A stretch of 64,000 bases of DNA from sequence record MK250021.1; one strand, written 5' to 3'. The notes under the pieces were generated by a model that saw nothing but the letters and a program-made list of their open reading frames with translations, ran no database searches and had not been told where the DNA came from. This document shows positions 27,936 through 59,603 of this stretch, piece after piece (positions within the stretch are counted from its first letter, which is position 1; every line of letters starts with the position of its first letter). The translations under genes and the position numbers were made by a program.

Positions 27936-27947
27936 TGTATCTTTGTA
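27936..27947 (+). promoter_or_regulatory. Bacteroidota-type -7 promoter element
   Basis: TGTATCTTTGTA upstream of 27974. Confidence 0.7.
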
Positions 27948-28984: not shown

Positions 28985-29381
28985 ATGATTTTAACAGAAA
29001 TAATATCAATAAGGAATTCTTATAGGATTCTTTAGCGGAGTTCTTGGTGAAAAAGGAGATAGTGAAGAATATACATATAAGTTAGGACCTATAGATGATT
29101 TATCACCATTATTTAAATGGGGAAATCGTTTTATAATTCCATGTGTATTATTTGCTTCACCAATAGGTTTTCTTGGAATTCCTTTATTGTATTTAGGCTT
29201 ATGTATAATTTTCGCATGTTTTGGAATTGATATTTATATATTAAGTGATAATACATTGAATATTATAGGACCTTATATATTACTATATTTTATATCATTG
29301 ATGATAGGATATAGTATAGGATGTTTTGTGACTAAAAAAGTAATATCTAATTTAATAAAGAAATATAATCATGAAAAATAA
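28985..29381 (+). pseudogene. membrane protein with apparent +1 frameshift near 29012
   Basis: ATG 28985 gives MILTEIISI; removing one A at 29011-29012 joins GILIGFFSGVLGEK... to TAA 29381, a multi-TM protein of about 131 aa. Confidence 0.5.
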
Positions 29382-29883
29382 TAAGTTTTATATTATTTTA
29401 GGATATAATGCACTTGATGAATCATATTGTGGTTATGTAGAGAATTCATTCTCTATGGGATGTGATGATGAGAGAGTACAGTTGTATTCTGTAAGTAAAG
29501 GAGATTTTCCGTGGAAGAATCGAGATTTTCCGGAGAGAAAGAAAATAGCAAAGAAATATCTAAAAGAAAATGGTGGTAGAAAAGCTTCTTTTGCACATGA
29601 TTATATTCCTGATGCTTATATGAATCCAAATTCTCCAAACCAATGGATTTGGTTTTATTTGCGTGATATTGCAGACAATTTGAATAAGAAACATTATAAT
29701 AATTGTTATTGGCAAGTATTTCGTGTTAACAGTAAACATTGCCCTGTTAATATAGATATGAAAGAATATTATAAGATTCAACATAATAAGAAATATAGAA
29801 TGACATTAACGAAATATGAAATAAGAAATATTAAATTTACAGTACAAGATCCTTTATTATTAGACTTTATACGTAATATTTAA
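29371..29883 (+). CDS. hypothetical protein (170 aa)
   Basis: Open frame, last gene before the ncRNA island. Confidence 0.75.
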   Translation: MKNNKFYIILGYNALDESYCGYVENSFSMGCDDERVQLYSVSKGDFPWKNRDFPERKKIAKKYLKENGGRKASFAHDYIPDAYMNPNSPNQWIWFYLRDIADNLNKKHYNNCYWQVFRVNSKHCPVNIDMKEYYKIQHNKKYRMTLTKYEIRNIKFTVQDPLLLDFIRNI

Positions 29884-29895
29884 TATAAAAAATAT

Positions 29896-30174
29896 ACAGT
29901 ATATAATTTTGTTATCTAAGTACATGATAATAAAATAGTGCATATCTAGTAAGACTATATGTATTTCAGTAATGGTACTGAAAGTGTTAATCGTTACTCA
30001 CGAAACAATATAAGAGTTATATGTTATATAGTAAAGACTAATATTGCAAAAGGTTAATACGCATATATAACATATATACCATTTGAGATTATGGTGAATA
30101 ATTGCAATTAGAATGTAACCATAATAATATGGCGGACCAATATAACATTCTGGGTTCGATTCCCTATATACTGT
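29896..30174 (+). ncRNA. 279-nt multi-hairpin RNA with tRNA-like acceptor/T-arm closure
   Basis: ACAGTATATA (29896) pairs with TATATACTGT (30165); GGG-TTCGATT-CCC T-loop at 30152-30164; internal helices TTTCAGTA/TACTGAAA, ATATGTTATATA/TATATAACATAT, AGAATGT/ACATTCT. Confidence 0.7.
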
Positions 30175-30229
30175 CTAAATAAAAAATTAAAAAAAGATTC
30201 ATAATTATTTTTTTAATTAAAAAAGAATG

Positions 30230-30241
30230 TGTATCTTTGTA
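30230..30241 (+). promoter_or_regulatory. Bacteroidota-type -7 promoter element driving non-coding RNAs
   Basis: TGTATCTTTGTA with no ORF downstream for more than 1.1 kb. Confidence 0.7.
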
Positions 30242-30255
30242 TTGTAAGAAATAAA

Positions 30256-30377
30256 AATGGTGATACAACCTATAAGCCATAGGTAACATGAGTTCGGTAA
30301 CCTCATGGTTCGTAAGTCGTGATAACGAATAGTCTCGGTAATAGTTGAAAAACCTTCATCGGTTATGTATCATTATT
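30256..30377 (+). ncRNA. structured RNA (closing stem plus at least three internal hairpins)
   Basis: AATGGTGATACA / TGTATCATTATT 12-bp closure; CCTAT/ATAGG, CATGAG/CTCATG and TTCGT/ACGAA hairpins. Confidence 0.55.
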
Positions 30378-30583
30378 TAACATTCATATGAGAATTAACG
30401 AAATGTCTCATATGAGCATGAGGAGTATTCCAACGGAACCGGTGTGTTTGGATTTTTAGTTGTGCATTTTTTTAATCTGACTATATTGTTGAGAAACAAT
30501 GAAAAAGAAGATACGTCGTCAGTACAAGTCCATATAATAATTTCGAAATAAAAATGGAAACTGTTAAAAATCGTATCTATTTT

Positions 30584-30681
30584 GGTTATGTTACATAATG
30601 GTTAATGAGGTATCTAATTGATATTTTAATATCAATGGAAGAAAGGTATTGCGGTGACGGGTTCGAGTCCCTCCATAACCA
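30584..30681 (+). tRNA. non-canonical tRNA-like gene with a hairpin inserted in the anticodon loop
   Basis: Perfect 7-bp acceptor GGTTATG/CATAACC plus discriminator A; D-loop AATGGTTA; T-loop TTCGAGT with a bulged stem; the anticodon loop holds about 30 nt including an ATTGATA/TATCAAT hairpin; anticodon not assignable. Confidence 0.6.
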
Positions 30682-30901
30682 CTCCTTATAATAATGAAAA
30701 GGATGCAATTATCTAACATAGATATTATTATAGTATAAGAAATTATGATAATTCTTAAAATGATAATCAAGAGATTGAAGTAACTAATTAATGTATAGTT
30801 ACTAAGGCGAAAGTATAACTGCAATTATATTAGTAGTTGGCGTTTAAAAGATTGAAGAAAATTATTTGCAGATAATTTTTGGATTGATATTAAATGTAAA
30901 A

Positions 30902-30995
30902 ATTATAATAGTGTAGCGGGAATGCACGTTCGATGATAAATCGGAAAGGGATTAACGGTATGACGTTATTAAGGGTTCGACTCCCTCTTATAAAC
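30902..30995 (+). tRNA. degenerate tRNA-like gene with long variable arm
   Basis: A/T-only acceptor (6 of 7 pairs), D-arm GTGT/GCAC, anticodon arm TTCGA-TGATAAA-TCGGA lacking U33, variable hairpin AACG/CGTT, T-arm GGG-TTCGACT-CCC. Confidence 0.55.
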
Positions 30996-31001
30996 AAATT
31001 T

Positions 31002-31156
31002 AAATACATATATTCTCACGAAGAGCGAGTAAGAGAAGGTGAGCAAATTATGTCTAATGTTATAAGTGATCATAATAACAGCTAAAACATAACAGAATTA
31101 TCTTAACGTAGGAGCTGTAAAAGGATGAACGTATGGTAACATCATTATATGTATTT
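31002..31156 (+). ncRNA. structured RNA with 11-bp closing stem
   Basis: AAATACATATA / TATATGTATTT; internal TTCTC/GAGAA and ACAGCT/AGCTGT helices. Confidence 0.5.
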
Positions 31157-31282
31157 TTATTGAATTTTTAATTGTTTGAAAATAACTTAATATATGTACT
31201 ACATCAAACTAATGACATATAAAATCAAACCAAGATGATAAGACAGAATTAAGTTATTTTTAATTTGTTTTGTTTATTTTCT

Positions 31283-31315
31283 AAAAGTCTATAATGGTTT
31301 TCATTATAGACTTTT
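31283..31315 (+). terminator. intrinsic terminator ending the ncRNA island
   Basis: AAAAGTCTATAATG / CATTATAGACTTTT. Confidence 0.7.
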
Positions 31316-31332
31316 TTATTTAAAATAAAATG

Positions 31333-31342
31333 TGTATCTTTG
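31333..31342 (+). promoter_or_regulatory. Bacteroidota-type -7 promoter element
   Basis: TGTATCTTTG heading the nadR-pnuC operon. Confidence 0.65.
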
Positions 31343-31382
31343 AAATATAAATTATAAGTAAAATAAAGTTGAATTATTAATT

Positions 31383-31816: not shown

Positions 31817-32974
31817 ATGAGTAAGAATATAGGAATTTGTTTTGGCGGATATTGTCCAATGCATCAAGGTCATCTTGATGTTATTATGCGAGCAAAGAAA
31901 GAATCAGATATTGTTTATGTTGTTGTATGTGGATATACAGATGAACCACGTGCGAATGAAATAGGTTTGAATATAAAGCAACGAGAACGACTTATTAGAG
32001 AATATTTTAAAGGCGATGAGATTATAAAAGTTGTTACTGTTAATGATACAGAATTAGGTATTGATGAAAGTATGTCTGAACATAATTGGAAAGTATGGAC
32101 TGATTATGTGAAGAAACTTATTGTTAACAAAGTTTTAGACCATAAAGATAATTGGCCTTTTACAGTAGACGATACTATTAACGCATTTGAGTTGAAACTT
32201 ACTTTTTATGTTGGCGAGAAGTTTTATGTTAAATCATTAGAGAAATTAAATTATAATGTTGTATTGGTAGGATATGACAGCAATTCACCTTCTAACAGAA
32301 GTAATGATATTTCTGCAACTCTTATACGTCAGAGACCACAACTTTACTGGAATAAGATTGTATCTACATTCAAACCAAAACTAACAAAGAAGATTCTTGT
32401 ATTAGGAACAGCATCAGAAGGCAAATCAACTCTTGTAAAAGATATTGGTAATTATTTTCAGGTTCCATATACTACTGAATTTGGTAGGGATTATATGGCG
32501 AAACATTGTATGTTAGATCCAGATATTACAGTAAACGATTTTGTTGAATTCCTTATAGGACAAAGACAATATTATTTTGATGCACTTAACAGTGATAAGA
32601 ATAAAGGTGTTATTATTTCTGATACTGATAATCTCGTTACTCTTATGTATGCGAAGGCATATACAATGGATAAGAACATGCAGATTACTGAAAAAGAATA
32701 TAATGATATATTGTTACCACTTGCAAAATCATTGCAGACTAATGTAGATTGGGATGTAATTTATCTTATCAAACCACATAATACATTTGTCGATGATGGA
32801 ACACGTTATATGGAGCAAAGTTCTATTGAAGAACGTATAAAAAATTATCATATTCTTGTTAAATTATTGGAGGACTTTGATTTACTTCATAAGGTTATAG
32901 AACTAGATGGTACATATCTTGAGCATTTTGATTATGTAAAGAATTATATAAATACACTCTATGAAAAGTATTAA
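31817..32974 (+). CDS. nadR: NadR-like NMN adenylyltransferase / nicotinamide riboside kinase (no HTH)
   Basis: Cytidylyltransferase-fold HxGH (PMHQGH), ISATLIR, P-loop GTASEGKST, EFGRDY, ISDTD. Confidence 0.9.
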   Translation: MSKNIGICFGGYCPMHQGHLDVIMRAKKESDIVYVVVCGYTDEPRANEIGLNIKQRERLIREYFKGDEIIKVVTVNDTELGIDESMSEHNWKVWTDYVKKLIVNKVLDHKDNWPFTVDDTINAFELKLTFYVGEKFYVKSLEKLNYNVVLVGYDSNSPSNRSNDISATLIRQRPQLYWNKIVSTFKPKLTKKILVLGTASEGKSTLVKDIGNYFQVPYTTEFGRDYMAKHCMLDPDITVNDFVEFLIGQRQYYFDALNSDKNKGVIISDTDNLVTLMYAKAYTMDKNMQITEKEYNDILLPLAKSLQTNVDWDVIYLIKPHNTFVDDGTRYMEQSSIEERIKNYHILVKLLEDFDLLHKVIELDGTYLEHFDYVKNYINTLYEKY

Positions 32975-54795: not shown

Positions 54796-56799
54796 TCAAA
54801 GACCTGCAACATCTACACAGAATGTAAGATATTGTGTTTCTGGATAGAAACCAGCGTCTACAAGAGCATATCTTGATTTTATCATAAGCTTAGGACTCAT
54901 TGTACCTTCTGCAATAATCTGAACTGATTCAGCCATTACATATGGACAGAAGTGAACACCTGGTTCATCCTTGCCACCCTTACGACCAACAAGTACACGG
55001 TTATCAGAACCACCCATAAGAGGGTCAACATAGATTGTCAAACCGAACATACCACCGATTGGATAAAGTGAACCGCCATTCTGAGAAATAGTGTTAGCAA
55101 CAGGTGAGAATGTATAGTTAGCGTTACTCTGAAGGAGTGTAGCGATTGTGATGTTAGTTACAGCGAATGTAGCTGCACCATAACGACCTCTCTGAAGAAT
55201 CCAGTTAGAAGCAGCCAAGAAGTTAACAGCAAGTCTCTTAAGAAGAGTATCACGGTTTTCGAAAGCTGCGCCAGAAGGAATATACATTGGCTTGTATGGA
55301 AGAGCAACATTTACATAGCTCTTATAAGCAACACCAGTTGCATCATTCATATCTGACTGAGGAATTGCAAGAGCAGGAGTCATACGAACACCAGAAGTTG
55401 CAGTATAAGAAGGATCGAAGCTAAGATTCAAGTTAGCTGCAGGACCTTCAACCTCAACAAGTTTGTAATGGTTCTTCCAACCAAGAGCGAACAAACGAGA
55501 TGTGATGTGACGGTTAATAGTTGCAGAAAGCTCGTTGATACCAGCATTCTCTACCATCTTGATAACATCGATACCCCATTGTTTCTGAAGGTCTGTTACC
55601 TGTTCCTGTGTTACAGCGCAACCCACCATAATTGTACCAACCTGTACGTTCTTTGTGAACAACTGAAGTGAAAGTTGACGAGCCATTGTTTGCTCACCAG
55701 TACCACGACTCATTGGTTCATAAAGTGTTGTACCATCCTGATATGTACCATACCAAGCGTCACGATCACGCTCACCAGCACCTGTGAAACCTTGAATTTG
55801 ATCCTCAAGCATTGAGATAAGACGAGGAGCGTGAAGTGTAAGAACTACATTTACTTCCTCAGAAGAACCAACTGGAGTATAAACTGCAGTAAAATCAAGT
55901 GAACCACCATTGAAATATGCACCAAGTGACTGTGTACCAGAAACCACCTTGAACATAGGATCACCATCGATACGAGACCAACCAATGAACTCAACTACAA
56001 GTTCGTTAGAAGCACCTACATGTGGATGAGAAGAATCGAAATCTACAAAATCAGATGCAGATACAAGTGTTGTACCAGCAGGCATTGCAGAAGCACCCTT
56101 CAACATACGCTTAATCTGTGCAGGAGACAACTTAACAGCAGTAGAAGAATCTGTTGTAGAACCATCAGCAACAGTAGCCTCACCAGGAGCAATAGAAGCC
56201 TTGAATGAATGAGGAAGACCATACATCTCGAAAGGAGCGTTAGTCTGAGAGTTAGCCTGAGGATTCTGTGTACGAGCTGAATAAGCAGGAGTAGCACCAT
56301 AAGGTTGCTTTGAACCTGAATATACATAATCCATATAAGGAAGAACACCGGTAGGACCATCAAGTGGAGTTGTGTTTACAAGTTCGAAACCGATAGTCTT
56401 AGCAGCGACCTTAAGAGCAAGAGGTAACAAAGTAGGATACTTGTCACCAGAACCAAGGTTCTTGTTATCAGCGTAGTCAGCGCCAGTCAAAGCAGGTTTG
56501 CCAGCAGGAACTGGATCACCAACACCGAGTGTATTATAAAGGTTGTTATATGGTTGATATGTACCACCGAACTGTGAATATGCGTTAGATGGCATTACGA
56601 ATGCATCCTCATTCAACTTTGCTGTATTATGTGCAAGCTGAGACATCCAAGCAAGTTTATCAGCATCTTCAACACCTGTGATTTTCTTAATAGTAGGTGC
56701 CCATGATTCATAGATAGCTTTGTCGCTATTCTTAGCAGTTGCACGATTTACATATGATTCGTAAGCCTATGCAACAGACTTATTACTTTTTACTTTCAT
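54796..56799 (-). CDS. major capsid protein, T4 gp23-like (667 aa; single TAG at codon 11)
   Basis: LLPLALKVAAKTIGFELVNTTPLDGPTG, AGINELSATINRHI, YCPY-like HFCPY, SRYAL; upstream frame is open to ATG 56799 (MKVKSNKSVA*AYESY...ESWAPTIKK), matching the gp23-like propeptide. Confidence 0.92.
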
Positions 56800-58217: not shown

Positions 58218-59603
58218 TTATTTATTTATCGCAACTGAATACTCATCAATAAGAGCATCCAAAAACTTTTGTCCATTAAATCCAACCTTAAGAAACTTAA
58301 GTAACATTGGTGAATATCCAGACATATAAATATTTCCATAATTATCTGTTTCTGGTACTGTAGTATTTCTTGAATTAAAATTCCACCAAACAATATGAGT
58401 ATTCATATTATTCTTTTTAAAAATATCCATCATCTCATCTTTTGTTTGATTACTACCACAATCCATTTCCATATCAGATAATACAATAATCCATTCTGGT
58501 GCATTCTCTTTATCAAGATTCTTCAATGCTTCACATACAGCAGCAAAATCTGTATTTGAACAATCACCTGTATACATAGATTGAATCTCTCTCATATATT
58601 GTGAAGTTTCCGTAATCTTCTGTGTTTTTGTAACAGAAGTTCTCCAATAATATTCTTGATATGTATTTTCAATACCAAGTTTCAATAACTGCGGATGACT
58701 TGAAAAACTCAATACAGTATCAGGTGCATAAGATGAACATTTAGCAAGATAATGACCTACTGCATAAGCCTTACCCATACTATCATTAGAATCATGCATA
58801 GATCCTGATGTATCTACTACTGGAATCCAACTTCCTGAAATCTTTTCAATTTTACTAAAGAAAAGATCTGGATCAATCTTCTCACGATTCTTGTAAATAT
58901 CATATACATTAGTAGTAGAAATCTTCAATTCTGCTTTACCAGAGCGTACATCTTCCTGATATTTAGCAAATCTTTCCTTTGTATCGTCACCTGTTGCAAA
59001 ACGGTTAAAATACTTAATCATCGCAAGTGAAGGCACTTGTTCAAACTTAATAGCTTCTGTATTATGTCTTGAAAGTTTCTGCTCTGTTGTATCAGATTTA
59101 ATGAAATGTCCATATGTCTGTTTATTCATTCTAAACTGCTTTGCAATCTTACGAGCAAGCATAAGGTTCTTAGATGAATATCGTGGCATCCACTTCTTAC
59201 AAAGTTCATTACCATTACGAATTTCCTTATACAAATATTCACACATATTTGCAAAGGCGTCATCTGGCATAGTCTCCCAACCAATAAACAAGTCATCATA
59301 TCGGCCAGCTTTAACAACCATATCTGGTGTTACATCAGTCATCAACATAAGTCTGCGTCCAAGTTCACGTCTACCCAAACCAAATCTAGGATCTCGCATC
59401 ATCATAGCAAACAGTTTCTCTCTATCTGATTTTCCAATCATAGGAATCTCATCAAGATGCTTACTATAATACTCAGACATAAACAAAATATCCAACATAG
59501 GATTCATTGTTGTACTATATGCCTTGTCACCATTCTCTGTAGTCTTTAATGCAAAAATCTCTTCAAGTTTCATAAAATTATTCATTTTAATTTTGTTATT
59601 CAA
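58218..59603 (-). CDS. DUF2828-type TROVE/Ro-like + vWA protein (start may be 59582 or 59573)
   Basis: TTENGDKAY, RDPRFGLGRR, GRYDDL, KKWMPR, VPSLAM, MIDAS motif DTSGSM, TDF, SDMEMD, VWWN. Confidence 0.8.
   Translation of the reverse strand: MNNKIKMNNFMKLEEIFALKTTENGDKAYSTTMNPMLDILFMSEYYSKHLDEIPMIGKSDREKLFAMMMRDPRFGLGRRELGRRLMLMTDVTPDMVVKAGRYDDLFIGWETMPDDAFANMCEYLYKEIRNGNELCKKWMPRYSSKNLMLARKIAKQFRMNKQTYGHFIKSDTTEQKLSRHNTEAIKFEQVPSLAMIKYFNRFATGDDTKERFAKYQEDVRSGKAELKISTTNVYDIYKNREKIDPDLFFSKIEKISGSWIPVVDTSGSMHDSNDSMGKAYAVGHYLAKCSSYAPDTVLSFSSHPQLLKLGIENTYQEYYWRTSVTKTQKITETSQYMREIQSMYTGDCSNTDFAAVCEALKNLDKENAPEWIIVLSDMEMDCGSNQTKDEMMDIFKKNNMNTHIVWWNFNSRNTTVPETDNYGNIYMSGYSPMLLKFLKVGFNGQKFLDALIDEYSVAINK

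What the first reader, a model, noticed from the sequence alone, without database searches (positions are those of the whole stretch)
29896..30174. 279-nt RNA whose ends form a tRNA-like minihelix
Seen: a 10-bp terminal stem directly followed by a 3-bp GGG/CCC stem with a TTCGATT loop, about 13 bp in total and close to the 12-13 bp acceptor+T helix of tRNA. In place of D and anticodon arms there are ~230 nt with at least six helices, including perfect 8-, 12- and 7-bp stems. It lacks the tmRNA GGGG 5' end, G3:U70 and ACCA. Inference: a novel tRNA-mimic ncRNA, analogous to tmRNA or bacterial YrlA in using a T-arm to engage tRNA-processing enzymes.
Basis: partly seen in the sequence, partly recalled or inferred. 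Interest (0 to 1): 0.68.

Follow-up and report, generated by a model that had tools for sequence, protein, structure and literature searches.

The report
tRNA-like structured RNA of Lak megaphages
A giant gut phage (Lak, infecting Prevotella) carries a conserved RNA gene of about 250-280 bases whose two ends fold like the top half of a transfer RNA around a large structured insert; it fits no described RNA family, and what it does is still unknown.

Summary
The window is Prevotella phage Lak-B (100% match). The described features are present: a 10-bp terminal stem (29896-29905 / 30165-30174) abutting GGG-UUCGAUU-CCC, plus 7-, 8- and 13-bp internal helices. I found 13 distinct variants, always directly after the same 164-170-aa ORF and once per genome in the two genomes scanned. 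The acceptor-like stem, T arm and internal helices keep pairing through compensatory changes (13 double-changed pairs; 0/500 shuffles). Within each sequence type the RNA is more conserved than the neighbouring ORF.

It is not the phage tmRNA. Lak encodes a canonical tmRNA and SmpB elsewhere. This RNA has no G3:U70 and no conserved tag frame. No Rfam family matches at E<=10, and ARAGORN finds no tRNA or tmRNA here. The TROVE partner idea has no support.

Best reading: a tRNA-derived ncRNA at the end of a three-gene transcript. Its minihelix probably recruits RNase P, tRNA 3'-end enzymes and the phage CCA-adding enzyme. The insert's function is unknown, and I found no RNA data. It is a new variant of a known kind, in a cluster with other unexplained structured RNAs.

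The parts
29896..29905 (+). 5' strand of the terminal stem. 29897-29903 (CAGUAUA) corresponds to acceptor positions 1-7. 29896 is position -1. 29904-29905 extend the stem in the B type.
   Evidence: Exact complement of 30165-30174, with pair probabilities of 0.72-1.0. Pairs 2:71, 6:67 and 7:66 change between types while staying paired. The -1:73 pair is A-U in the B type and U-A in the A and intermediate types.
29906..29936 (+). Hairpin P2' (11 bp), specific to the B type.
   Evidence: Minimum-energy fold. It lies in the 5' ~90 nt that do not align with the A type.
29938..29964 (+). Hairpin P3' (7 + 4 bp), specific to the B type.
   Evidence: Minimum-energy fold. Variant L050 has small insertions or deletions here that would break any reading frame.
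29965..29982 (+). Hairpin P4' (7 bp, loop AUGG).
   Evidence: It occupies the same position as the 5-bp P4 of the A and intermediate types, which has two compensatory pairs.
29985..30007 (+). Hairpin P5 (UGUU/AACA plus UCGU/ACGA), preceded by the conserved UUAAUC. The homologous 3' part of the RNA begins here.
   Evidence: G-C changes to C-G within the B type (variant L050), and U-A changes to C-G within the A and intermediate types. The flanking columns are invariant.
30018..30076 (+). Central domain P6'/P7: a 13-bp helix closing a branched tip.
   Evidence: A compensatory G-C to A-U change occurs in L050 and another in L054. The tip helix P7 has two double changes in the A and intermediate types.
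30079..30132 (+). Domain P8 (CCAU/AUGG) enclosing P9 (8 bp, AUUAUGGU/ACCAUAAU).
   Evidence: P9 pairs 6, 7 and 8 and P8 pairs 1 and 2 covary across the B, intermediate and A types.
30138..30146 (+). CAAUAUAAC stretch just before the T arm, conserved except for its last base (U in variant L054). It is either single-stranded or the 3' strand of an alternative long-range helix with GUUAUAU.
   Evidence: Conserved in 12 sequences, the last base varying once. RNAalifold proposes the long-range pairing, but there is no covariation to support it.
30152..30164 (+). T-arm-like hairpin GGG-UUCGAUU-CCC.
   Evidence: The orthologs have a 4-5-bp stem (UGUGG/CCACA), and pair 51:63 changes from G-C to U-A. 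The pair probability is low in the B-type ensemble.
30165..30175 (+). 3' strand of the terminal stem. 30167-30173 are acceptor positions 66-72, 30174 is position 73, and 30175 is the C that follows position 73 in the Lak tRNA genes checked.
29371..29883 (+). Upstream ORF (170 aa, PHROG 15953, function unknown). It ends 8-13 nt before the RNA in every variant.
27937..27945 (+). Nearest upstream copy of the promoter-type box GUAUCUUUG. It is the likely start of the transcript that ends with the RNA.
   Evidence: The box occurs 9 times against 0.83 expected. No terminator is predicted between it and the RNA. Its role as a promoter is inferred.
30231..30239 (+). Next copy of the same box, marking the start of the following RNA cluster.
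   Evidence: The order RNA, box, second RNA, two tRNA-like genes, box is kept in five of six loci checked (the sixth, L045, lacks the last box).

Best explanation
This is a conserved non-coding RNA gene of Lak megaphages. It is built on a tRNA chassis: an acceptor-like stem stacked on a T arm, and in the A and intermediate types also a D-like hairpin. A structured insert of about 170-230 nt sits inside that chassis.

Proposed mechanism (inferred, not observed):
1. The RNA is transcribed as the tail of the three-gene unit that starts at the promoter box at 27937. In the A type it lies between two ORFs.
2. The 12-13-bp minihelix is read by RNase P, which cuts at or next to C29897.
3. The tRNA 3'-end machinery trims at or after position 73.
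4. The phage-encoded CCA-adding enzyme completes the 3' end.
5. These steps release a stable RNA of about 250-280 nt and at the same time separate it from the mRNA.
6. The conserved insert (P5 to P9 plus the CAAUAUAAC stretch) is the working part. Its partner is unknown.

The RNA does not decode codons and it is not the phage's tmRNA.
For: Conservation and structure:
- 13 distinct variants from baboon, human and other gut samples all lie directly after the same ORF.
- The covariance model finds one copy each in the two whole genomes scanned (A1 and B4) and none in an unrelated 636-kb phage.
- Ten helices are 99% paired. 13 pairs have changes on both sides, against 0 of 500 shuffles and 0-2 in the slid controls.
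- Acceptor pairs 6:67 and 7:66, T-stem pair 51:63, and helices P5, P8 and P9 covary between types.
- Within a type, the RNA is more conserved than the adjacent ORF: 93.9% against 87.4%, 84.9% against 80.5%, and 78.5% against 74.7%.
- G-U pairs in P1, P2, P5 and P8 fix the strand as +.

tRNA-like features:
- The stack length is kept while its make-up changes: 7+5 in the A type and 9+3 in the B type.
- Position 73 is followed by C, as in the Lak tRNA genes checked, and a PolyA_pol/CCA-adding enzyme gene is present.

Genomic context:
- The promoter-type box and the single predicted terminator place the RNA at the end of a transcription unit, next to a cluster of tRNA-like genes.
- The authors who described these phages report highly expressed intergenic regions (PMC6784885).
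Against: - No RNA reads could be obtained, so transcription, the RNA's ends and CCA addition are all unobserved.
- In the window's own type, the T stem has only 3 bp and is out-competed in the energy model. One variant carries a mismatch there.
- The B type lacks the D-like GG loop.
- All variants come from one phage lineage with few deep branches. The shuffle control therefore overstates significance, and single-column covariation is uninformative.
- Nothing identifies the function of the insert.
Confidence: 0.55

Rival explanations
1. It is a cis-acting tRNA-like punctuation or stability element only. It would be a decayed tRNA gene that has picked up inserted sequence, and whose sole role is to give RNase P and 3'-end enzymes a site that ends or protects the upstream mRNA. 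Plant mitochondrial t-elements and the mascRNA module work this way. The insert would have no function of its own.
For: The RNA sits 8-13 nt after the ORF in every variant. In the A type it lies between two ORFs with no promoter or terminator of its own. The 5' 90 nt were replaced in the B lineage without loss of the element.
Against: The insert is the best conserved part. P5, P8 and P9 covary, and stretches such as UUAAUC, UGAGAUUAU and CAAUAUAAC are almost unchanged between types that share only 61% of residues in the neighbouring protein. A processing signal needs only the minihelix.
Confidence: 0.2
2. It is a relative of the tRNA-like modules that sit inside Lak tRNA 'introns'. It would be part of a mobile or splicing-related system, for example a trans-acting RNA that helps remove those inserts.
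For: The four published Lak tRNA introns each contain a 7-8-bp stem directly abutting a 5-6-bp T arm, about 13 bp in all. Their presence or absence varies between genomes (Table S6 of PMC6784885). Lak has no RtcB, and the introns hit nothing in Rfam according to the authors' table. The neighbouring tRNA-like gene shares the T arm of this RNA within each clade and carries inserts of different length.
Against: This RNA is fixed at one locus and was found once in each of the two genomes scanned. No sequence similarity to the intron modules beyond the T loop was shown. No catalytic motif is known or detected.
Confidence: 0.08
3. It is a Y-RNA-like partner of the DUF2828 protein at 58218-59603, as in the reader's pull-down idea. 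The tRNA-like module would act as in bacterial YrlA.
For: The protein belongs to a phage family labelled RNA-binding (PHROG 850, E = 3e-44) and has a second domain, DUF7788; related protein clusters also carry VWA_2. Bacterial Ro60 partners do mimic tRNA (my own knowledge of that family).
Against: No TROVE match was found in two whole Lak genomes or in the protein itself at E<=10. No match to a solved structure was found. The gene is 28 kb away, two genes from the capsid gene. No Rfam family, Y-RNA families included if the library holds them, reaches E<=10 here. The free ends of this RNA lie in the acceptor-like stem, unlike YrlA.
Confidence: 0.06
4. It is a second, divergent tmRNA-like rescue RNA.
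For: Its layout is a tRNA-like domain plus a long insert. The phage encodes SmpB. A-type and intermediate-type sequences show a short frame ending at a conserved UAA.
Against: A canonical tmRNA with G3:U70 and a tag ending in MAA is encoded elsewhere in both genomes. This RNA has G3-C70. ARAGORN finds no tmRNA here, and the Rfam tmRNA model does not match the element at E<=10. The frame is absent in the B type and broken by small insertions or deletions in L050. Changes in P4 are compensatory for RNA pairing but not conservative for the peptide. The similarity to the tmRNA tag region is at chance level, reached by 232 of 2000 shuffles.
Confidence: 0.04
5. It is a chance fold in A+T-rich intergenic DNA.
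For: The A1 ortholog alone has z = -1.5. A+T-rich DNA makes many hairpins.
Against: Conservation exceeds that of the flanking ORF, compensatory changes occur in seven of ten helices, the position is fixed, and the T-loop motif is clustered.
Confidence: 0.01

Closest known systems
tmRNA (SsrA)
   Same: A 7-bp acceptor stem stacked on a T arm closes a long structured insert. The size is a few hundred nt. The phage also encodes SmpB.
   Different: No G3:U70, no conserved tag frame, no helix 2 directly after the acceptor strand, and no match to the tmRNA model at E<=10. The phage has a canonical tmRNA elsewhere.
Class II tRNA (long variable arm)
   Same: The A and intermediate types have an acceptor stem, a 4-bp D-like stem with a GG loop, a hairpin at the anticodon-arm position, a short hairpin where a variable arm would be, and a T arm. 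Position 73 is followed by C, as in the Lak tRNA genes checked.
   Different: The 'anticodon' hairpin has 7 bp and a variable 7-8-nt loop without U33 or R37. About 170 nt lie between it and the T arm. Neither Rfam nor ARAGORN calls a tRNA, except in one of five full-length variants in intron mode and in artificial deletions, and then with inconsistent anticodons.
Phage T4 RNAC and RNAD (stable RNA species of the tRNA region)
   Same: They are phage-encoded small stable RNAs transcribed from the tRNA gene region, and their role is still unknown (PMC3014915; PMC9697503).
   Different: There is no sequence relation, and the T4 RNAs are smaller. That their ends are tRNA-like is my recollection and was not checked here.
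tRNA-like modules inside Lak tRNA 'enigmatic introns' (Devoto et al. 2019)
   Same: They occur in the same phages and have the same minihelix design: a stem abutting a T arm with a GUUCGAWUC-type loop, about 13 bp in total.
   Different: The intron modules are 55-90 nt, lie inside tRNA anticodon loops and are variably present. This RNA is 253-278 nt, free-standing and fixed at one locus.
YrlA / bacterial Y RNA
   Same: It has a tRNA-mimicking module with a T arm.
   Different: The ends of YrlA form the Ro-binding stem, and it is encoded next to the Ro60 gene. Here the ends form the acceptor-like stem, no TROVE protein was detected and there is no adjacency.
GOLLD and ROOL large phage-associated RNAs
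   Same: They are large, ornate RNAs of unknown function found in phages, often beside tRNA genes (my own knowledge).
   Different: No Rfam family, GOLLD and ROOL included if the library holds them, matches here at E<=10. They are much larger, and their ends do not form a tRNA minihelix.

Membership tests
tmRNA | G3:U70 alanine identity pair in the acceptor stem | tested here: not met
   Pair 3:70 is G-C in all 13 variants. A G-U pair lies at 2:71 in the A and intermediate types only.
tmRNA | Conserved resume codon and tag reading frame ending in a stop | tested here: not met
   The short frame seen in the A and intermediate types is absent in the B type and broken in L050. Substitutions there follow RNA pairing rather than peptide conservation.
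tmRNA | Match to the Rfam RF00023 model or an ARAGORN tmRNA call | tested here: not met
   No match in the element at E<=10 and no ARAGORN call. The same model finds the true Lak tmRNA at 54 and 47.3 bits elsewhere.
tRNA | Cloverleaf recognised by covariance or heuristic models | tested here: not met
   RF00005 does not match the element at E<=10 in the B or A type. ARAGORN finds nothing in default mode; in intron mode it calls one of five full-length variants (L045), and it also makes calls on some artificial deletions.
tRNA | 7-nt anticodon loop with U33 and a purine at 37 | tested here: not met
   The loops of the hairpin at that position read UAUGACU, UAUAAUU, UAAGUGUU and UAAGAAUU. The B type has a different hairpin.
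tRNA | Acceptor/T coaxial helix of 12 bp with a canonical T loop | tested here: met
   7+5 bp in the A type, 7+4 plus one mismatch in the intermediate type, and 9+3 in the B type. The loop is UUCGAUU, UUCGAAU or UUCGAUC.
YrlA / Y RNA | Match to any Rfam Y-RNA-like family, and free ends in a Ro-binding stem | tested here: not met
   No Rfam family reaches E<=10. The ends form the acceptor-like stem.
YrlA / Y RNA | A Ro60 (TROVE) gene nearby | tested here: not met
   PF05731 finds nothing in two whole Lak genomes. The DUF2828 gene is 28 kb away.
Group I intron in a tRNA gene | Match to the group I model, and a tRNA restored on removal of the insert | tested here: not met
   No Rfam match. In-silico removal gives no consistent tRNA.
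Lak intron-borne tRNA-like modules | Stem abutting a T arm (about 13 bp in total), preceded by a small hairpin and an A-rich linker, and inserted at tRNA position 37/38 | tested here: inconclusive
   The minihelix is shared and an A-rich leader is present. This RNA is not inside a tRNA, and no 5' hairpin was seen. The intron sequences were read from the paper only and were not modelled.
Substrate of RNase P, RNase Z and the CCA-adding enzyme | Cleavage at +1 and at position 73, and non-templated CCA | not testable with these tools
   No RNA run holds the locus.

The most novel reading that the evidence does not exclude
The 1.5-kb gene-free stretch 29884-31380 may encode a Lak-specific set of expanded tRNA-chassis RNAs. 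These are this 278-nt RNA, a 99-172-nt paralog-like tRNA mimic and a 330-nt heavily covarying RNA. The set may work together with the minihelix-bearing tRNA 'introns' as a new RNA-based system. For example, it could be a trans-acting RNA or RNP that recognises or removes those inserts, or a tRNA-shaped scaffold charged or tailed by phage enzymes for a purpose other than decoding.
Probability: 0.1. Interest if true: 0.85.

Novelty: new variant of a known kind. Interest (0 to 1): 0.6.

Why it matters
Lak megaphages are among the largest phages of the human and animal gut. They recode TAG and carry some 30 tRNAs, a tmRNA, SmpB and a CCA-adding enzyme. Their authors noted 'highly expressed intergenic regions' and 'enigmatic' tRNA introns without explaining them.

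This finding puts a defined RNA gene, well supported by covariation, into one such region. It shows that tRNA mimicry in these phages goes beyond the annotated tRNAs. The result is a concrete, testable RNA with known boundaries, helices and likely processing enzymes. It also offers a possible link to the unexplained introns. Finally, it adds to the short list of large structured phage RNAs of unknown function that sit beside tRNA genes.

Tried and rejected
- **Rfam:** nothing at the gathering threshold over the whole window, and nothing meaningful at E<=10 over 29700-31300 or over the A1 ortholog.
- **ARAGORN:** no tRNA or tmRNA in the element in default mode. In intron mode it calls one of five full-length variants (L045, as a tRNA-Tyr with a 170-nt intron), and it also calls some artificial cores with the central domain removed; anticodons are inconsistent.
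- **tmRNA idea:** rejected once the canonical Lak tmRNA and SmpB were found. The apparent similarity of the A-type hairpin region to the tmRNA tag region is at chance level, reached by 232 of 2000 shuffles. Whole-length local alignments are not above shuffles for 6 of 8 pairs.
- **TROVE link:** not supported.
- **Wider homologs:**
  - Two DNA patterns and two protein-anchored scans of IMG/VR returned only Lak A and B clades plus chance hits.
  - The one metagenome scan added a single new A-type variant.
  - The genome-collection pattern scan gave three bacterial loci that the covariance model rejects.
  - The 636-kb phage LR756504 shares only the promoter-like box.
- **RNA evidence:** the run search found one DNA-type holder and no RNA run.
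- **Covariation scan of all column pairs:** uninformative, because there are few independent lineages.
- **Covariance-model alignment of the B type:** it misplaces the 5' strand because of the 50-nt difference. B-type pairs were therefore read from the MAFFT alignment and directly from the sequences.

Full report
**Identity of the window.** The stretch 29800-30300 is 100% identical to six complete Prevotella phage Lak-B genomes and 98.6% identical to three more. Only its 3' part aligns to Lak-A and Lak-C. Lak phages are about 540-550-kb megaphages of gut Prevotella. They read TAG as an amino acid and carry about 30-35 tRNA genes, some with 'enigmatic introns'. Their authors also report highly expressed intergenic regions (PMC6784885).

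**The observation.**
- ACAGUAUAUA (29896-29905) pairs perfectly with UAUAUACUGU (30165-30174).
- GGG-UUCGAUU-CCC (30152-30164) lies directly against the 3' strand.
- The loop is a textbook T loop.
- The minimum-energy fold (-66.4 kcal/mol, z = -3.6, 1 of 200 shuffles as stable) contains the 7-bp and 8-bp stems, a 13-bp stem and further hairpins.
- A given 10-mer in this window has an exact reverse complement 60-320 nt upstream in only 0.36% of positions.
- The motif GGGTTCGAnTCCC occurs three times in 64 kb, all between 30152 and 30985.

Two caveats apply. In the energy model of the B-type sequence, the 3-bp T stem is out-competed by CGGACC/GGUUCG, with a pair probability of 0.05. The Lak-A1 ortholog alone scores only z = -1.5. 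Energy alone would not carry the case.

**Comparative evidence.** I anchored on the upstream ORF and on conserved DNA words and collected 13 distinct versions.
- Five are B type (277-278 nt).
- Five are A type (253 nt).
- Two are intermediate (253 and 255 nt).
- One further B-type sequence has a T-stem mismatch.

In every case the RNA starts 8-13 nt after the stop codon of the same 164-170-aa ORF (PHROG 15953, unknown function). A covariance model built from the A and intermediate types finds one copy in each whole Lak-A1 and Lak-B4 genome (292 and 64 bits). It finds no paralog apart from a weak match to the neighbouring tRNA-like gene, and nothing in an unrelated 636-kb phage.

**Structure of the A and intermediate types.** RNAalifold gives ten helices:
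- a 7-bp acceptor-like stem;
- a 4-bp D-like stem whose loop ends in GG;
- a 7-bp hairpin at the anticodon-arm position;
- two short hairpins;
- a central domain;
- a P8/P9 domain;
- a 4-5-bp T stem.

Of the cells, 99.1% are paired and 13 pairs have changes on both sides. No shuffle out of 500 reaches these values, and slid controls give 0-2 such pairs.

**Covariation between types**:
- Acceptor pair 6:67 is U-A, C-G or U-G.
- Pair 7:66 is A-U or G-C.
- T-stem pair 51:63 is G-C or U-A.
- Three pairs of P9 and two of P8 covary.
- P5 changes from G-C to C-G inside the B type.

The many G-U pairs fix the transcribed strand as +. Within a type, the RNA is more conserved than the protein-coding neighbour: 93.9% against 87.4%, 84.9% against 80.5%, and 78.5% against 74.7%.

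All sequences come from one phage lineage, so the shuffle statistic is generous. A scan of all column pairs was uninformative. The evidence lies in whole helices staying paired.

**What differs in the window's B type.** The first ~90 nt do not align with the A type. Three other hairpins stand there, the GG loop is gone, and the T stem is reduced to three G-C pairs. The terminal stem is two pairs longer, so the continuous stack stays at 12 bp: 9+3 instead of 7+5. The -1:73 position also pairs in both types (A-U against U-A), giving 13 bp.

One intermediate variant has a B-like ORF (83% nt identity) but an A-like RNA (64% to B). The B-type 5' part therefore looks like a later replacement. That the stack length survives while its make-up changes is the best internal argument that the minihelix itself is under selection.

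**What it is not.**
- *Not a known Rfam family:* there are no matches at the gathering threshold or at E<=10.
- *Not a decoding tRNA:* neither the tRNA model nor ARAGORN in default mode calls it, and the loop at the anticodon position varies without U33 or R37. In intron mode ARAGORN calls one of five full-length variants. Deleting the central domain in silico yields a class-II-like tRNA call in only two of five variants. The anticodons are inconsistent throughout.
- *Not the tmRNA:* Lak-A1 and Lak-B4 each encode SmpB (184-186 bits) and a canonical tmRNA above the Rfam threshold. That tmRNA has a GGGG start, G3:U70 and a tag ending in MAA. The present RNA has G3-C70. A short frame seen in the A and intermediate types is missing in the B type. 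Its substitutions are compensatory for RNA pairing, and its resemblance to the tmRNA tag region is at chance level.
- *Not linked to a TROVE protein:* the protein at 58218-59603 is DUF2828 + DUF7788 (PHROG 850, 'RNA-binding protein'). The TROVE model finds nothing in two whole genomes, and the gene lies 28 kb away, two genes from the capsid gene. I could not fold it.

**Context and likely mechanism.** The box GUAUCUUUG fits the Bacteroidetes -7 promoter consensus TAnnTTTG (my own knowledge). It occurs 9 times in the window against 0.83 expected. Copies lie at 27937 (before three ORFs and then the RNA), at 30231 and at 31334. The only predicted + strand terminator in the region is at 31283-31315.

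The RNA therefore most likely forms the tail of the 27937 transcript. In Lak-A it even lies between two ORFs, with 8 and 19 nt to spare. None of the eight Lak tRNA or tRNA-like genes I inspected has position 73 followed by CCA: seven carry a single C there and one (Val) reads ACC. This RNA carries the single C, and the phage encodes a PolyA_pol-family CCA-adding enzyme. The missing ACCA is thus the local rule, not an argument against tRNA-like maturation.

From established knowledge, bacterial RNase P, RNase Z and CCA-adding enzymes recognise the acceptor/T minihelix. I therefore infer that these enzymes cut the RNA out of its transcript and finish its ends. The conserved insert would then be the functional part. 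None of these steps is observed, because no RNA run holding the locus could be found.

**Relation to other Lak oddities.** The published intron sequences each contain a 7-8-bp stem abutting a 5-6-bp T arm, about 13 bp in all. Each is preceded by a small hairpin and an A-rich linker (Table S6).

The gene that ARAGORN calls tRNA-Ile (30584-30682) has no D stem and has a 9-bp hairpin in place of an anticodon arm. It is 172 nt in Lak-A. Within each clade it shares its T arm with the present RNA.

Between the two lies a 330-nt RNA with its own promoter box. It has 25 compensatory pairs among five variants and no Rfam match.

Lak has no RtcB. Together these findings suggest a lineage-specific set of expanded tRNA-chassis RNAs. 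Whether they act together is open.

**Verdict.** This is a real, conserved RNA with a tRNA-like minihelix, and I found no description of it. The analogies to tmRNA and YrlA hold for layout only, and membership in either family fails the tests. The proposed protein partner has no support. I rate it a new variant of a known kind (tRNA-mimicking structured RNA), of moderate to high interest. The RNA's boundaries and helices are well supported; its function is unknown.

Noticed in passing
window 30245-30583 (+): A second conserved structured RNA of about 330 nt with its own promoter-type box at 30231-30239. RNAalifold on five Lak variants gives 79 pairs, 25 of them with compensatory changes. There is no Rfam match at E<=10.
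   Followed up: partly
window 30584-30682 (+): The gene that ARAGORN calls tRNA-Ile(GAU) is not a cloverleaf. It has no D stem and has a 9-bp hairpin where the anticodon arm should be. Its Lak-A ortholog is 172 nt. Within each clade it shares its T arm with the 278-nt RNA, and the covariance model of that RNA hits it weakly (24.6 bits). It may be a paralog.
   Followed up: partly
window 30902-30995 (+): A class-II tRNA-Tyr-like gene whose anticodon loop reads UGAUAAA in Lak-B (anticodon AUA with G at position 33). ARAGORN reads the anticodon as GUA in Lak-A. It scores below the Rfam tRNA threshold (23.1 bits against 29).
   Followed up: no
window 613, 2926, 5316, 9331, 23119, 27937, 30231, 31334, 47620: The box GUAUCUUUG occurs 9 times against 0.83 expected, often just upstream of genes. 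It fits the Bacteroidetes -7 consensus TAnnTTTG, so it is likely a phage promoter element. A related box is the only thing shared with the 636-kb phage LR756504.
   Followed up: partly
MK250015 223026-223421 (-) and 507073-507504 (-); MK250023 416686-417095 (+) and 118615-119046 (+): Lak phages encode a canonical tmRNA (tag reading about DDEIDFRMAA) and SmpB. ARAGORN misses this tmRNA, but Rfam finds it at 54 and 47.3 bits.
   Followed up: yes
Lak tRNA genes (L070; window 30584-30995): None of the eight Lak tRNA or tRNA-like genes inspected has position 73 followed by CCA: seven have a single C there and one (Val) reads ACC. The phage encodes a PolyA_pol-family CCA-adding enzyme and no RtcB.
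   Followed up: partly
Lak tRNA introns (Table S6 of PMC6784885): Each published 'enigmatic intron' contains its own acceptor-like stem abutting a T arm, about 13 bp in total. Each is preceded by a small hairpin with an A-rich loop and an AAAUUAAA-like linker. They look like nested tRNA-like modules.
   Followed up: partly
L052 and L054 against the window: The upstream ORF of L052 is B-like (83% nt identity) but its RNA is A-like (64% to the B type). This points to recombination, or to replacement of the RNA's 5' 90 nt in the B lineage.
   Followed up: partly
window 58218-59603 (-): A DUF2828 + DUF7788 protein (PHROG 850, 'RNA-binding protein') lies two genes from the Gp23-like major capsid gene (54796-56799). 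There is no TROVE signal by sequence, and its fold was not tested.
   Followed up: partly
window 31817-32974 (+): A NadR-like protein (cytidylyltransferase-like domain plus AAA_28). In related loci it is followed by a PnuC-type NMN transporter. This is an NAD salvage module next to the RNA cluster.
   Followed up: no
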